From Macrostomum lignano (taxonomy: Eukaryota): a stretch of DNA of 64,000 bases. Both the position numbers and the translations under genes were made by a program. The notes beneath the pieces are model-generated. The model had not been told where the DNA came from and did no database searches. It saw only the letters and a program-made list of their open reading frames with translations. Every line of letters starts with the position of its first letter. Position 1 is the first letter of the stretch. The stretch lies in contig NIVC01000103.1 of NCBI GenBank assembly GCA_002269645.1, positions 372,001-436,000 on the forward strand, in the 5' to 3' direction. This document shows positions 46,592 to 62,456 of the stretch, piece by piece.

Positions 46592-49500
46592 TCAAAGGAA
46601 TCGGTGCTCGCCTCCTCCAGCTTCAGGTCCGGGCGCCTCGGCGGTGGCGACAGCAGCCTGCTCCGGCTGTGTCAGTTCGTCCATTCGGAAGCCGTCGTTT
46701 TCTTGACCTCCGTGACCTCCGTTGTTGATGCTGAGTCGGTTCGGTGACTTGTAACCGCCGCCTGCACTGGCGACACGGTCTGACGGGTGCTCATCGCTGC
46801 ATCCGTTGTTGAGGCCGCCGCCTTGGGCGCTGCTGCAGTGGCTCGCCCGTCTTTGACTTCGGCGGAGTGAGGCTGGTCTGGGCGCCAGGTGCGTCACAAT
46901 CATTGAGTCCTGGGGATTGGCGGATTTTCATTTCGAGCTCATTTGCAGTCTGGCGCACTCCAATGTACACTGCTCCAATGTACGCTGCTCCAATGTACGC
47001 TGCTCCAATGTACACTGCTCCAATGTACACTGCTCCAATGTACACAGCTCCAATGTACACAGCTCCAATGTACACTGCTCCAATGTACACTGCTCCAATG
47101 TACGCTGCTCCAATGTACACTGCTCCAATGTACACTGCTCCAATGTACACTGCTCCAATGTACACAGCTCCAATGTACACAGCTCCAATGTACACTGCTC
47201 CAATATACACTGCTCCAATGTACACTGCTTCAATGTACACTGCTTCAATTTACACTGCTTCAATGTACACTGCTTCAATGTACACTGCTCCAATGTACAC
47301 TGCTTCAATGTACACTGCTTCAATGTACACTGCTCCAATGTACACTGCTTCAATGTACACTGCTCCAATGTACACTGCTTCAATGTACACTGCTCCAATG
47401 TACACTGCTCCGATATCAAGCCCCAGCTTACCGGCTTGAACCGCTCCGTGCCCCAGACCTTGGCCACAACGAACTCAACGATCAGTACAACGAAGCCGGC
47501 GCCAATGCCGGCGCCAAGCAGCACGAAGACTCCGCTGAGGGTCTTCAGCTGCACGCCTGGTGAAATGCGGCAGTGGCGGGTTGGCGGGCGATGGCTGCCT
47601 CTGGCTGTTTTGCACACTGGGACTGGGTTCCTGTCTCTTCTGTCTCTCTCATCTCTCCCTCTCTCACCTCTCTCCCTCTCTTATCTCTATCCCTCTTCCC
47701 ATCTCTCTCCCTATCTCACCTCCCTCCCTATCTCACCTCCAGATATTCCAACTCATACCTCCAACCTCCAATATTCCAACTCATACCTCAATCAATATCA
47801 TCAGTCTTATAACAAACCTTAAGCTACATGACCAAACAGACAGCAGCTGAAGACAAACGAACGTGCCCATAACTCAAAACGGGAGGTGAGTCTACAGTAG
47901 ATGGATAGGAGAGATAGGGACACAGCAGCACGAAGACTCCGCTGAGGGTCTTCAGCTGCACGCCTGGTGAAATGCGGCAGTGGCGGGTTGGCGGGCGATG
48001 GCTGCCTCTGGCTGTTTTGCACACTGGGACTGGGTTCCTGTCTCTTCTGTCTCTCTCATCTCTCCCTCTCTCACCCCTCTCCCTCTCTTATCTCTATCCC
48101 TCTTCCCATCTCTCTCCCTATCTCACCTCCCTCCCTATCTCACCTCTCTCCCTCTCTCACCTCTCTCCCTCTCTCATCTCTCTTCTTCTCCCATACCTTA
48201 GCCTCATTCCGAAACCTCTGTCAGCACTACCCCGCCTGTTGAGTGTTCCCAGACCAAATGCTGCACTCACCAGAGGAAACTTTCTCCGTGGAGCACTGCA
48301 CCTTCTCCCGTTCCCACCAGTAAACTTTGAAGGACTCCAGCGACCGATCGTTCTGCATGTTGAGTATGCTGAAATTGGGGGTCAGGAATTGCCCCTGGTT
48401 GTGTGTCAAGCAGCATTCAAAACCGCTCATTTGGCGCCCTTGACACCCTCATCTTGGCACTCCCTGACACCCTCATCTTGGCACTCCCTGACACCCTCAT
48501 CTTGGCATTCCCTGACACACCCATCTTGGCATTCCCTGACACACTCATCTTGGCACTCCCTGACACACTCATCTTGGCACTCCCTGACACACTCATCTTG
48601 GCACTCCCTGACACACTCATCTTGGCACTCCCTGACACCCTCATCTTGGCACTCCCTGACACCCTCATTTTGGCACTCCCTGACACACTCATCTTGGCAC
48701 TCCCTGACACCCTCATCTTGGCATTCCCTGACACCCTCATCTTGACACTCCCTGACACCCTCATCTTGACACTCCCTGACACCCTCATCTTGGCACTCCC
48801 TGACACCCTCATTTTGGCACTCCCTGATACCCTCATCTTGGCATTCCCTGACACCCTCATCTTGACACTCCCTGACACACTCATCTTGGCACTCCCTGAC
48901 ACACTCATCTTGGCACTCCCTGACACACCTATCTTGACACTCCCTGACACACTCATCTTGGCATTCCCTGACACCCTCATCTTGGCACTCCCTGACACGC
49001 TCATCTTGGCACTCCCTGACACACTCATCTTGACACTCCCTGACACACTCATCTTGGCACTCCCTGACACACTCATCTTGGCACTCCCTGACACACTCAT
49101 CTTGGCACTCCCTGACACACCTATCTTGACACTCCCTGACACCCTCATCTTGGCATTCCCTGACACCCTCATCTTGACACTCCCTGACACGCTCATCTTG
49201 GCACTCCCTGACACACTCATCTTGACACTCCCTGACACACTCATCTTGGCACTCCCTGACACCCTCATCTTGGCACTCCCTGACACCCTCATCTTGGCAC
49301 TCCCTGGCACACTCATCTTGGCACTCCCTGACACTCAGTTTGGCGCCGAAAACAAGCAACTTTGGCGCTCCTGAAGAAACTGGTGAAATCGTGTAGAAAA
49401 ATGCAGTTAAAGCATACAGCCTTACGCCATATTAAAGAGGCTGGTCAAAGGAGAGTTCTTCTGCAGAGCGATGCCGTAGGGCCTCGAACTCAGGATCTCG

Positions 49501-61500: not shown

Positions 61501-62456
61501 TCCGAGATTCTCCAATCCAAGATTCTCCCCACCAAGATTCTCCACTCCAAGATTCTCCTAACCAAGATTCTCCTAACCAAGATTCTCCCCTCCGAGATTC
61601 TCCAATCCAAGATTCTCCCCTTCAACATTACTCTCCGAGATTCTCCCCTCCGAGATTCTCCCCTCCGAGATTTTCCAATCCAAGATTCTCCCCTCCGAGA
61701 TTCTTCCCTCAAAGATTCTCCCCCAAGATTCTTCCCACCAAGATTCTCCCCTCCAAGATTTTCCCCTCCAAGATTCTCTTCACCAAGATTCTCAATTTAT
61801 TACCTGAAGCACGGCACGCCCAAATGCCTGATAAACGCTGCTGCTTCCGTTGCCCCCGCCGCTGGCCTCTCTGTACGAGGAGTTTCCGATCGCTGAGCAG
61901 TTGGCAACCGGATTTGAGAACAGCGGGCCAGCCTCCGACATCAGCAGGGACTGTGCCGCAGACAGAGCCAGAGTCAACGTGTCCGATTGAGTCGCGAAAC
62001 GCACCTGGAAGGGAAATAGCCAGTGAAATTGCTCACTGAATCATTGCTCCGCCCCATCAATCTGTTCCTGCAGTCTCACCGCCTGTCCCGATCCGGTCCG
62101 GTTAGCCCGTGTTGCCATGGTAACAGCGGCATCCCTGCCGGCAGCAGGTAGAAAAGAGACCTGATAGACCGGCTGCTGCGTGCGCAGGCCGACCAAACCG
62201 CTGTTTAGGTAGAACCAGGTGAAAAATCTGGTTGTCAAGCGGACTTGATTTGCAGCGGTCAGAGTGGCCTCGGCAACTGATGTCTCGGCGGCCAAAACGA
62301 ACAGTGTGGCCCGGGTTCGATTCCGCACCGATTCGAGGAAATCTGGAAGCTCGCTAGAGTTGCTTGGCAACCGGAAGAGGTAGGCGGGGCCGGGGAATCC
62401 GGGACCCGGAAGCAGCGATGTGGGATCTGGGAGGGATGGGATTGGTTGGGATTCGT
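46592..62456 (-). CDS. Ir25a: Ionotropic receptor co-receptor of the IR25a/IR8a clade (iGluR superfamily, retains an ATD); 5'-incomplete
   Basis: Ten phase-compatible exons: 62456-62080, 62004-61804, 58269-58120, 57944-57765, 56843-56316, 55298-55184, 49702-49426, 48368-48271, 47556-47432 and 46909-46592. Motifs: DFSIPYYDYAG, FDRLSPYSFQN, YTANLAAFLTVSKL, FAQMRDIESKFYDVWREL, VWEYPIEEQY, SRPYGIALQ and YWWERE. The S2 insertion FYDVW..VWEYP has the same length as recalled IR25a FYEIW..VWDYP. Confidence 0.85.
46965..47410. repeat. Intronic 15-bp minisatellite (ctccaatgtacactg)
   Basis: Last intron of the receptor gene. Confidence 0.95.
47924..48146 (-). pseudogene. Duplicated acceptor plus partial M4 exon (pseudo-exon), copy of 47517-47739
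   Basis: A 223-bp direct duplication at offset 407. It carries catttcaccag|GC GTG CAG..GTG CTG CT and then diverges to a stop at 47824. Confidence 0.8.
48437..49335. repeat. Intronic 24-bp minisatellite (gacaccctcatcttggcactccct)
   Basis: Directly visible. Confidence 0.95.
49762..50255. repeat. (ATTG)n microsatellite
   Basis: Directly visible. Confidence 0.95.
50782..54742 (+). CDS. Ankyrin-repeat protein with an N-terminal 19-aa Pro/Glu tandem repeat, 543 aa, nested antisense in a receptor intron
   Basis: Exons 50782-52196, 53313-53500 and 54714-54742 total 1632 nt in frame. Splicing rebuilds a canonical ankyrin repeat (DVNATDLHGR|TALSYAAQHGLCDIVRWL) and the ending LSEVI|DILDDSVDK*. About 13 units of PEGPGTPEAPVSPQVNSLQ. 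Confidence 0.82.
52455..53090. repeat. Intronic 52-bp minisatellite related to the exonic 57-bp repeat of the same gene
   Basis: Unit cctgaaggacactcttgaagctcctgtgtctctccaggtgaattccctacag, about 12 copies. Confidence 0.93.
53545..54640. repeat. Intronic 30-bp minisatellite (ctcgagtctaacacctgttctaacagctca)
   Basis: Directly visible. Confidence 0.96.
55462..56160. repeat. Intronic 42-bp minisatellite (gatgcatgaccaatgttgtcttcagtcatgctgtgagcgatgagt)
   Basis: Directly visible. Confidence 0.93.
56885..57715. repeat. Intronic 15-bp minisatellite (ggagtgacgggtct)
   Basis: Directly visible. Confidence 0.95.
58002..58105. repeat. (CTAT)n microsatellite
   Basis: Directly visible. Confidence 0.97.
58885..59590. 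repeat. Intronic 24-bp minisatellite (aataatccttggtttatcaagtgc)
   Basis: Directly visible. Confidence 0.96.
60620..61795. repeat. Intronic 15-bp minisatellite (aagattctcccctcc)
   Basis: Directly visible. The same family recurs at 63878-64000. Confidence 0.95.

What the first reader, a model, noticed from the sequence alone, without database searches (positions are those of the whole stretch)
46592..62456. IR25a-like chemosensory co-receptor in a non-arthropod-looking genome
Seen: the PYYD motif after the S1 DFS, SPYSFQN after M1, and an S2 insertion FYDVWRELTVQQEIASAGGSLYTVWEYP that matches IR25a FYEIWKDLSLNDSLTAVERSKLAVWDYP in length. The 115-bp exon at 55184-55298 that completes it is not obvious from the ORF track. 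Ligand positions read R (AER), G in place of the S2 Thr, and E (FMET), similar to the Thr loss in IR25a. Established: IR25a is the ancestral protostome IR co-receptor and keeps the ATD. Inference: this is a candidate chemo/thermo-sensory co-receptor for a lineage where IR biology is little studied.
Basis: partly seen in the sequence, partly recalled or inferred. Interest (0 to 1): 0.72.

Follow-up and report, generated by a model that had tools for sequence, protein, structure and literature searches.

The report
Flatworm IR25a-like ion channel gene
This is a real, intact-looking gene for an IR25a/IR8a-type "co-receptor" glutamate-receptor subunit in the flatworm Macrostomum lignano; it is a new member of a family already known across protostomes, so it is useful but not surprising.

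Summary
A minus-strand gene of at least 10 GT-AG exons (62456/62426 down to 46592) splices into one 817-aa reading frame. It encodes part of an amino-terminal domain, S1, M1, pore, M3, S2, M4 and a tail. The 115-bp exon 55298-55184 is needed to keep the frame.

A full HMMER search gave a nemertean "ionotropic receptor 25a-like" protein as best hit (1.6e-127). [quoted passage not shown] Kainate, AMPA and delta types score far lower.

With the CREL columns removed, a neighbour-joining tree puts the protein with IR25a and IR8a, apart from 77 insertion-less iGluRs (99% bootstrap).

Some caveats apply:
- The genome is Macrostomum lignano or a near relative.
- The gene sits in a flatworm-wide clade that includes DjGluR1 and the published S. 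mansoni IR.
- That clade joins the spiralian "IR25a-like" paralogues (77%), not strict IR25a.
- The CREL lacks its N-glycosylation motif.
- The 5' exons of the amino-terminal domain are outside the window.
- A sensory function is untested.

This is a new member of a known kind, of modest interest.

The parts
62080..62456 (-). First exon visible in the window, encoding the middle of the amino-terminal domain. It starts in phase 1, so an upstream exon is missing.
   Evidence: This is the only segment of the window that hits a profile of the relatives' amino-terminal domains (13.5-15 bits, E 8e-4 over all segments).
61804..62004 (-). Exon 2 (amino-terminal domain, contains the conserved Cys).
   Evidence: AG/GT borders and in phase.
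58120..58356 (-). Exon 3 (end of the amino-terminal domain and the linker to S1, ...KLKVLTMP).
57765..57944 (-). Exon 4 (first part of S1, EAPFVFYENG...MIGQLAAL).
   Evidence: tblastn of flatworm homologues ends at these borders.
56316..56843 (-). Exon 5. It holds the S1 Arg (AER, 56807-56799), DFSIPYYD (56786-56763), M1 (56675-56619), SPYSFQN (56609-56589), the pore loop VTQAGESFDPR (within 56528-56472), and M3 with LYTANLAAFLTV (56456-56376).
   Evidence: tblastn E 1e-46 to 1e-51.
55184..55298 (-). Exon 6, the 115-bp exon. It encodes the start of S2 (YSVQRDTIGYSFF, with Gly at the Thr position) and the first half of the CREL.
   Evidence: Canonical splice sites. Needed for the frame. Weak but collinear tblastn matches. 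Conserved columns in the alignment.
49426..49702 (-). Exon 7. It encodes the second half of the CREL ending in WEYPIEEQY, an NTT site, the acidic ligand residue (FMET), and the first LBD Cys.
48271..48368 (-). Exon 8 (end of S2, YWWEREKVQC).
   Evidence: This intron position is shared with the paralogue P0002.
47432..47556 (-). Exon 9 (M4, LSGVFVLLGAGIGAGFVVLIVEFVV).
46592..46909 (-). Exon 10 (cytoplasmic tail of 105 aa, then stop TGA at 46594-46592).
47924..48146 (-). Upstream copy of a 223-bp tandem duplication (99.6% identical, offset 407 bp). It repeats the intron end, the acceptor and the first 40 nt of the M4 exon, so it is a decoy acceptor at 47963.

Best explanation
The locus is a protein-coding gene of the free-living flatworm Macrostomum lignano, or a very close relative. 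It encodes a subunit of the ionotropic glutamate receptor superfamily that belongs to the IR co-receptor clade (IR25a/IR8a). Within that clade it sits in a flatworm-wide subfamily whose nearest relatives are the spiralian 'IR25a-like' (IR25b-type) paralogues.

Shown here:
- An intact spliced reading frame with S1/S2 clamshell, M1, pore loop, M3, M4 and a tail.
- A 30-residue co-receptor extra loop at the start of S2.
- A retained S1 Arg and S2 acidic residue, with Gly in place of the S2 Thr.
- Gln at the pore Q/R position.
- At least 271 residues of an amino-terminal region before S1.

Inferred:
- Like IR25a and IR8a, the protein probably assembles through its amino-terminal domain into heterotetrameric cation channels. 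Partners could be other IR-type subunits, possibly the other Macrostomum paralogues.
- It probably supports their export and targeting in peripheral sensory neurons.
- Its own pocket lacks the Thr and is unlikely to bind glutamate in the classical way.
For: Gene model:
- Ten GT-AG exons give one frame of 817 aa plus a stop.

Domains:
- Pfam Lig_chan 4.4e-34, Lig_chan-Glu_bd 6.2e-25, SBP_bac_3 3.3e-15.
- The AF2 model has pLDDT of about 90 over much of the ligand-binding and channel parts. Foldseek matches full-length GluK2, GluA2 and GluD at about 1e-32.

Family:
- Among 1.84 billion representatives the best hit is Tubulanus 'ionotropic receptor 25a-like' at 1.6e-127.
- The next ~80 hits nearly all have DFxxPY[YF][DE] and W[DEQ]YP.
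- Named ones include Littorina, Haliotis, Patella, Ylistrum, Crassostrea and Microctonus IR25a(-like).
- Insertion-less kainate/AMPA-like hits appear only from about 1e-62.

Phylogeny (392 gap-poor columns, so almost no CREL columns; 161 sequences, 300 bootstraps):
- Co-receptor types versus 77 insertion-less iGluRs: 0.99.
- Window plus flatworms: 0.94-0.97.
- Window plus flatworms plus spiralian IR25a-like: 0.77.

Other measures:
- Profile scores for the window core: IR25b-type 537, strict IR25a 435, insertion-less 404, IR8a 343 bits.
- CREL length is 30 in the window, median 30 in IR25a, 27 in IR8a, 0 in the others. This matches the published definition.

Species:
- UniRef A0A1I8FGY9 of M. 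lignano is 100% identical over about 100 aa of exons 7-9.
- Minisatellite families are shared with M. lignano contigs at 83-94% identity.

Flatworm clade members were confirmed by name: Dugesia, Macrostomum, Cichlidogyrus, Opisthorchis, Schistosoma, Trichobilharzia, Echinostoma, Fasciolopsis, Fasciola and Spirometra.
Against: - There are no expression data, so neither transcription nor sensory-cell expression is shown.
- The only public model of the locus (P0148) is a chimera of sense and antisense ORFs and is not mRNA evidence.
- The CREL has no NxS/T motif, although the motif was reported as conserved in IR8a and IR25a.
- The pore reads VTQAGESFDPR, not the TPQGGGEAP of IR25a/IR8a.
- The amino-terminal region matches relatives only weakly, and its first half is missing from the window.
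- No tuning IRs are known here for flatworms.
- The tree is neighbour-joining only. The 0.77 node could be affected by long branches.
- A decoy acceptor duplication sits upstream of the M4 exon.
Confidence: 0.72

Rival explanations
1. It is the strict one-to-one orthologue of IR25a (Drosophila IR25a, Aplysia IR25a, C. elegans GLR-7), merely fast-evolving in flatworms. Its grouping with the spiralian IR25a-like paralogues would then be a long-branch artefact.
For: - The CREL has the same length as in strict IR25a (30 versus a median of 30).
- It shows GPISV.AER and PYYD, as in Aplysia and Ixodes IR25a in Croset's alignment.
- No strict IR25a from any flatworm turned up. This would fit the family being the flatworm IR25a.
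- The 0.77 node comes from neighbour-joining only.
Against: - All 14 flatworm sequences score higher on the IR25b-type profile than on the strict IR25a profile. For the window the margin is +102 bits.
- In 78% of replicates the window joins an IR25b-type sequence first.
- Eight alignment columns support flatworm=IR25b-type, against two that support flatworm=IR25a.
- The window has the AG[IL]Q motif after PYYD and lacks TPQGGGEAP, both shared with the paralogue group.
- Molluscs hold both types, so the two lineages are old.
Confidence: 0.15
2. It descends from the co-receptor clade but works as an ordinary neuronal amino-acid-gated channel subunit in the flatworm nervous system. It would not be a chemosensory co-receptor.
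For: - The S1 Arg, the S2 acidic residue, the LBD disulphide cysteines and the Gln at the Q/R site are all kept.
- The planarian member was deposited as a glutamate receptor (DjGluR1).
- No tuning IRs were seen in this work.
- The absence of the CREL glycan could mean the trafficking checkpoint of insect IRs is not used.
Against: - The S2 Thr that contacts the ligand in AMPA and kainate receptors is replaced by Gly. It is lost throughout the co-receptor clade.
- The published S. mansoni member is expressed in free-swimming, host-seeking miracidia. Its RT-PCR sense primer encodes SRMREW, which is present in P0029.
Confidence: 0.25
3. It is an unexpressed or decaying duplicate. M. lignano has several paralogues and a duplicated genome.
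For: - The 5' end was not found in the window.
- A decoy acceptor duplication lies before the M4 exon.
- Introns are packed with minisatellites.
- The public model of the locus is broken.
Against: - There is no stop or frameshift in 2.45 kb of coding sequence spread over 16 kb.
- All nine introns are GT-AG and in phase.
- Invariant family residues are kept.
- The frameshifts in the public model are absent from this sequence, so they look like errors of an older assembly.
Confidence: 0.07
4. It is a kainate, AMPA or delta-type iGluR whose S2 insertion arose independently.
For: - The best solved structures by sequence are GluK5, GluD1 and GluK3 at about 1e-60.
- The first, word-limited search listed only kainate-like names after the flatworm hits.
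Against: - The split has 99% bootstrap with nearly all insertion columns removed.
- All hits better than about 1e-62 are CREL-bearing.
- Alignments to PDB receptors break into two stretches at the insertion.
- Six signature columns are shared with all co-receptor types and differ from the outgroup, including YY in place of FM after the Pro.
Confidence: 0.01

Closest known systems
Spiralian 'ionotropic receptor 25a-like' paralogues (IR25b-type). Examples are Tubulanus polymorphus XP_074657321.1, Littorina saxatilis XP_070185890.1, Haliotis rubra XP_046556602.1 and Patella vulgata XP_050390554.1. LgigIR25b of Croset et al. 2010 looks like this type by motif.
   Same: - Best HMMER scores (1e-127 to 1e-95) and 40-44% identity over the core.
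- CREL present.
- DF.xPYYD followed by AG[IL]Q.
- A pore without the Pro-Gln-Gly-Gly-Gly motif.
- Highest profile score (537 bits).
- Sister group in 77% of bootstraps.
   Different: - The flatworm sequences form their own clade (0.94-0.97).
- The window protein lacks any NxS/T in the CREL, whereas 9 of 15 of these paralogues have one.
- The equation with LgigIR25b rests on motif resemblance in Croset's trimmed alignment. It was not tested in a tree.
Flatworm family members: DjGluR1 of Dugesia japonica (Q8MMK3), the 'S. mansoni IR' of Liang et al. 2016 (PMC5080760), and M. lignano paralogues A0A1I8I3K3 (P0019) and BOX15_Mlig002395g2 (P0002).
   Same: - They fall in the same clade.
- Shared motifs are DFSIPYYDYA, SP[YF]SFQNR, TQAGESFDPR and W[EKQ]YP[IV].E[RQK][YF].
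- Identity is 45% to DjGluR1 and 52% to P0019.
   Different: - This is a distinct paralogue. P0019 is its closest (bootstrap 0.85-0.93), and P0002/P0003 are further away.
- In P0002 the region covered here by exons 5 (3' part), 6 and 7 is a single exon.
- The parasitic members carry NxS/T in the CREL. Most of the Macrostomum/Dugesia set do not.
IR25a sensu stricto (Drosophila IR25a, Aplysia IR25a, Crassostrea XP_011422952.1, C. elegans GLR-7).
   Same: - Same clade against all other iGluRs (0.99).
- CREL of identical length in the same place, ending in W[DE]YP.
- PYYD motif.
- S1 Arg and S2 acidic residue kept, S2 Thr lost.
- An amino-terminal region is present.
   Different: - Only 34-38% identity over the core (28-30% over the whole fragment).
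- The pore is VTQAGESFDPR rather than TPQGGGEAP[KR].
- There is no CREL N-glycosylation motif, which 53 of 61 strict IR25a have.
- The profile score is 102 bits lower than for the paralogue group.
- It is not sister to this group in the tree.
IR8a (arthropod co-receptor).
   Same: A CREL, the PY[YF] motif, an amino-terminal domain and a W.YPI.EQY ending. The window's WEYPIEEQY resembles IR8a's WDYPIKEQY.
   Different: - IR8a forms its own clade (0.92-0.98) with ATFTANLAAFLTVER.
- It gives the lowest profile score for the window, 343 bits.
Kainate, AMPA and delta receptors (GluK2/3/5, GluA1-4, GluD1/2).
   Same: The overall fold and domain order, YTANLAAFLTV, the LBD disulphide and Gln at the Q/R site.
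   Different: - They have no CREL.
- They have PFM. instead of PYYD.
- They have Thr at the S2 ligand position.
- Sequence scores are only about 1e-60.
- They are separated from the window protein by a 0.99 split.

Membership tests
Ionotropic glutamate receptor superfamily | A bipartite S1/S2 ligand-binding domain interrupted by M1, a re-entrant pore and M3, followed by M4, with the SYTANLAAF-type M3 motif. | tested here: met
   Pfam Lig_chan 4.4e-34, Lig_chan-Glu_bd 6.2e-25, SBP_bac_3 3.3e-15. LYTANLAAFLTV is present. The AF2 model with Foldseek matches GluK2, GluA2 and GluD at about 1e-32.
IR co-receptor clade (IR25a + IR8a and relatives) | Groups phylogenetically with IR25a/IR8a, to the exclusion of AMPA, kainate, delta and other iGluRs. 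| tested here: met
   NJ bootstrap 0.99 on 392 gap-poor columns (almost no CREL columns), 161 sequences. The top ~80 HMMER hits are nearly all of this type.
IR co-receptor clade (IR25a + IR8a and relatives) | A co-receptor extra loop (CREL): about 30-35 extra residues near the start of S2, absent from iGluRs and tuning IRs (Abuin et al. 2019). | tested here: met
   There are 30 residues between the anchor columns. The median is 30 in IR25a, 27 in IR8a and 0 in insertion-less iGluRs. The model shows a helix followed by a low-confidence loop.
IR co-receptor clade (IR25a + IR8a and relatives) | A single N-glycosylation motif (NxS/T) inside the CREL, reported as conserved in IR8a and IR25a. | tested here: not met
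   The window CREL has no NxS/T. The motif is present in 13/13 IR8a, 53/61 strict IR25a, 9/15 IR25b-type and 6/13 flatworm sequences. The nearest NxS/T, NTT, lies 19 residues downstream of the CREL.
IR co-receptor clade (IR25a + IR8a and relatives) | A retained amino-terminal domain upstream of S1. | tested here: inconclusive
   271 residues precede S1. Only exon 62080-62456 matches a profile of the relatives' amino-terminal domains (13.5-15 bits). Pfam ANF_receptor gives no hit. pLDDT is 70-89 for residues 21-100 and low for 147-260. The first 130-180 residues are not in the window.
IR co-receptor clade (IR25a + IR8a and relatives) | Broad expression in sensory neurons, and a requirement for the trafficking and function of tuning IRs. 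| not testable with these tools
   No expression or functional data were accessible. The only related evidence is RT-PCR of the S. mansoni member in miracidia.
IR25a sensu stricto (orthologue of DmelIR25a / AcalIR25a / GLR-7) | Falls inside the IR25a orthologue clade and is a reciprocal best match. This is the orthology criterion of Croset et al. 2010. | tested here: not met
   The best matches are the IR25a-like paralogue group, not strict IR25a. Profile scores are 537 versus 435 bits. The sister group is IR25b-type in 0.77-0.78 of replicates. Ylistrum and Solemya each have both types. The tree is NJ only, so orthology is not finally excluded.
IR25a sensu stricto (orthologue of DmelIR25a / AcalIR25a / GLR-7) | The characteristic pore-loop sequence TPQGGGEAP[KR], shared with IR8a. 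| tested here: not met
   The window reads VTQAGESFDPR.
Kainate/AMPA-type iGluR | No S2 insertion, DF[ST]KPFM after the S1 Arg, and Thr at the S2 ligand position. | tested here: not met
   The window has the insertion, DFSIPYYD, and Gly at the Thr position.

The most novel reading that the evidence does not exclude
Flatworms may have no strict IR25a at all and may instead rely on the IR25b-type lineage. In Macrostomum this lineage has split into at least three paralogue groups with a glycan-less CREL. If flatworms also lack tuning IRs, these subunits would have to form complete sensory or ligand-gated channels among themselves. That would give a view of what IR co-receptors did before tuning IRs existed.
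Probability: 0.15. Interest if true: 0.55.

Novelty: new member of a known kind. Interest (0 to 1): 0.3.

Why it matters
- It provides a clean, spliced model for a Macrostomum lignano IR co-receptor-type gene. The only public model of this locus is a 404-aa chimera.
- It shows that the DjGluR1 / S. mansoni IR family spans the whole flatworm phylum: macrostomids, triclads, monogeneans, trematodes and cestodes.
- It suggests that this family is tied to the spiralian IR25a-like paralogues rather than to IR25a itself.
- M. lignano is transgenic- and RNAi-tractable, so the gene is a practical entry point for testing what IR co-receptors do outside arthropods.
- It also allows a test of whether the CREL glycan is dispensable there.
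- None of this overturns current views. IRs are already held to be protostome-wide.

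Tried and rejected
- The first word-indexed homologue search returned no IR25a names after the flatworm hits, only kainate-like ones. That reflected the word filter, not biology. The exhaustive HMMER search reversed the picture.
- Single-sequence phmmer of the 271-aa N-terminal fragment against relatives' amino-terminal domains found nothing. Only a profile gave a weak, collinear match.
- A scan of all stop-free segments of the window with that profile found no further upstream exons.
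- Rooting the tree on one plant GLR was unstable, with the root falling inside the ingroup in 30% of replicates. I switched to unrooted split support.
- One 'insertion-less' intruder in the co-receptor clade (P0057) has strict IR25a motifs and apparently lost the loop in its gene model. It was removed.
- I hoped P0148 (UniRef A0A1I8FGY9) would give mRNA-level support for the 115-bp exon junction. It does read ...ASAGGSLY across that junction. However, the model mixes sense and antisense ORFs and out-of-frame stretches, so it was rejected as evidence.
- I looked for conserved intron positions in the paralogue P0002. The borders of the 115-bp exon are not conserved, because the region is one exon there. 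The two introns flanking exon 8 are conserved.
- No paper on Macrostomum IRs, and none on IR25a in planarians, was found in the library.

Full report
**What is in the sequence**

The region is eukaryotic, and nearly every intron holds a minisatellite. There are 14 arrays with periods of 4-57 bp between 46 and 64 kb. On the minus strand, stop-free segments with iGluR-like translations join through canonical AG/GT sites into ten exons:

- 62456 (or 62426)-62080
- 62004-61804
- 58356-58120
- 57944-57765
- 56843-56316
- 55298-55184
- 49702-49426
- 48368-48271
- 47556-47432
- 46909-46592

All are in phase and give 817 codons followed by TGA. The first exon begins in the middle of a codon, so the gene is cut at its 5' end.

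The acceptor 30 nt downstream (CCCATCCCTCCCAG|AT) has a far better pyrimidine tract and is in the same phase. It also places the residues D-PTSLL where the relatives have FD-ASLL or FD-AGSIL.

**Check of the observation**

- DFSIPYYD after the S1 Arg
- SPYSFQN after M1
- the S2 stretch FYDVWRELTVQQEIASAGGSLYTVWEYP
- AER, Gly at the S2 Thr position, and FMET

The 115-bp exon has good splice sites. Without it the frame breaks and stops after 37 codons, and running on into the intron after the preceding exon stops after 19 codons. Its product aligns with conserved columns of the family and gives weak collinear tblastn matches to two flatworm homologues.

**What it is**

Pfam finds the three iGluR domains. 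By sequence, the best solved structures are GluK5, GluD1 and GluK3 at about 1e-60, and those alignments break in two at the S2 insertion.

A word-indexed search found DjGluR1 of the planarian Dugesia japonica (4e-135) and Macrostomum lignano proteins. After those it listed only kainate-like names. That list was misleading.

An exhaustive HMMER search of 1.84 billion cluster representatives gave a different picture:

- The best hit is 'ionotropic receptor 25a-like' of the nemertean Tubulanus (1.6e-127).
- About 80 proteins follow, nearly all carrying DFxxPY[YF][DE] and W[DEQ]YP.
- Named ones include IR25a(-like) of Littorina, Haliotis, Patella, Ylistrum, Crassostrea and Microctonus, plus IR8a-type sequences.
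- Insertion-less kainate/AMPA-like proteins start only at about 1e-62.

[quoted passage not shown] 2019 defined as specific to IR8a and IR25a. In my alignment it holds 30 residues in the window protein. The median is 30 in strict IR25a, 27 in IR8a and 0 in other iGluRs.

**Phylogeny**

No maximum-likelihood program was available, so I wrote a neighbour-joining analysis with bootstrap. It used 392 gap-poor columns. This threshold removes almost all of the CREL columns, so the loop cannot drive the result.

On 161 clean sequences the supports were:

| Split | Bootstrap |
|---|---|
| {window + flatworms + spiralian IR25a-like + strict IR25a + IR8a} versus 77 insertion-less iGluRs | 0.99 |
| window + flatworms | 0.94-0.97 |
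| window + M. lignano paralogue P0019 | 0.85-0.93 |
| flatworms + spiralian IR25a-like | 0.77 |
| strict IR25a + IR8a | 0.68-0.70 |

The insertion-less set includes the named kainate- and AMPA-like references.

**Which branch of the co-receptor clade**

Strict IR25a is very conserved. Oyster and insect copies are 42-45% identical and share TPQGGGEAP in the pore.

Molluscs have a second, more divergent gene that NCBI also calls 'IR25a(-like)'. Ylistrum has P0202 and P0027, and Solemya has P0205 and P0024. By motif this second gene resembles LgigIR25b in Croset's alignment.

The window protein and all 13 other flatworm sequences fit this second group better:

- Profile scores for the window are 537 bits for the second group against 435 for strict IR25a.
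- Eight alignment columns support the second group, against two for strict IR25a.
- The AG[IL]Q motif after PYYD is shared with the second group.

So 'IR25a-like' is right, but one-to-one orthology to IR25a is not shown and is probably wrong. Long-branch attraction cannot be excluded with these tools.

**Species and family breadth**

UniRef A0A1I8FGY9 of Macrostomum lignano is 100% identical to the window protein over about 100 residues of exons 7-9. In between, it carries stretches that are out-of-frame readings of the same DNA. The window also shares minisatellite families at 83-94% identity with unrelated M. lignano contigs. The window is therefore M. lignano or a very close relative.

That public model is a chimera of sense and antisense ORFs, so the locus is effectively unannotated.

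The flatworm clade was confirmed by name to include Dugesia, Macrostomum (three paralogue groups), a monogenean, six trematode genera and a cestode. The 'S. mansoni IR' of Liang et al. 2016 belongs to it. Its RT-PCR sense primer encodes SRMREW, which is found in the Schistosoma sequence of this clade.

**How it probably works**

Shown:

- The model folds with high confidence over most of the ligand-binding and channel parts. It matches full-length GluK2, GluA2 and GluD structures.
- The pocket keeps the Arg and the acidic residue but has Gly for the Thr. That Thr is lost throughout the co-receptor clade.
- The pore has Gln at the Q/R position, and the two LBD cysteines are present.

Inferred by analogy with IR25a and IR8a:

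- It is a subunit of heterotetrameric cation channels.
- It pairs through its amino-terminal domain and escorts partner subunits to sensory endings.

Points that do not fit:

- The CREL has no N-glycosylation motif.
- The amino-terminal region is very divergent and only partly in the window.
- No tuning IRs are known here for flatworms.

An alternative is that the Macrostomum paralogues assemble with each other, or that the protein acts as a neuronal amino-acid receptor.

**Novelty and score**

IRs are already regarded as protostome-wide. Flatworm members have been in databases since DjGluR1 and in the literature since 2016. This is a new member of a known kind, with three modest extras: a correct gene model, the link to the paralogue lineage, and a glycan-less CREL in most free-living flatworm copies. 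Interest is 0.3.

Noticed in passing
window 50737-53511, + strand: A gene on the opposite strand is nested in the 5.5-kb intron between exons 6 and 7 of the IR gene. ORF 50737-52200 holds a coding 57-bp minisatellite (PEGPGTPEAPVS... repeats, 50906-51648) followed by ankyrin repeats (Ank_2 5.9e-5). A further ankyrin exon lies at 53155-53511 (Ank_5 2.4e-6).
   Followed up: partly
window 47924-48146 versus 47517-47739: A 223-bp tandem duplication (99.6% identical, offset 407 bp) copies the intron end, the acceptor and the first 40 nt of the M4 exon. Using the upstream copy would read into a stop and lose M4.
   Followed up: partly
window 46000-64000: Fourteen different minisatellite arrays (periods 4-57 bp, up to 79 copies) fill the introns of the gene. 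Several give long spurious ORFs on both strands.
   Followed up: partly
window 8321-12538, - strand: A multi-exon ankyrin-repeat gene (Ank_4 6.6e-18, Ank_2 9.3e-16 on separate exons), interleaved with proline-rich repeat arrays.
   Followed up: partly
window 27698-34800, + strand: A CLPB/Skd3-like gene. Ankyrin-like exons lie around 27698-29140, an AAA_2 exon at 33752-34150 (3e-23), and a ClpB_D2-small exon at 34255-34800 (2e-9).
   Followed up: partly
window 43862-44641, - strand: A 260-aa cysteine-rich ORF with an N-terminal hydrophobic stretch, so it looks secreted. It has no Pfam match.
   Followed up: no
window 23315-23816 and 34999-35862; L001 2105-3194 and 6566-7403: Minisatellite families are shared at 83-94% identity between this window and unrelated M. 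lignano contigs (NIVC01002143.1, NIVC01004051.1). They appear to be dispersed, genome-wide repeat families.
   Followed up: no
P0148 (UniRef A0A1I8FGY9) versus window 46592-49702: The public protein model for this locus strings together antisense ORFs (for example + strand 46604-46747 and 49540-49689), out-of-frame stretches and true exons. This suggests an inverted or error-rich stretch in the older assembly.
   Followed up: partly
P0039/P0188 (Belonocnema kinseyi XP_033217570.1): Some proteins that NCBI names 'ionotropic receptor 25a' carry the IR8a signatures (DFVAPYFE, ATFTANLAAFLTVER, WDYPIKEQY) and cluster with IR8a. Automated names in this family are therefore unreliable.
   Followed up: partly
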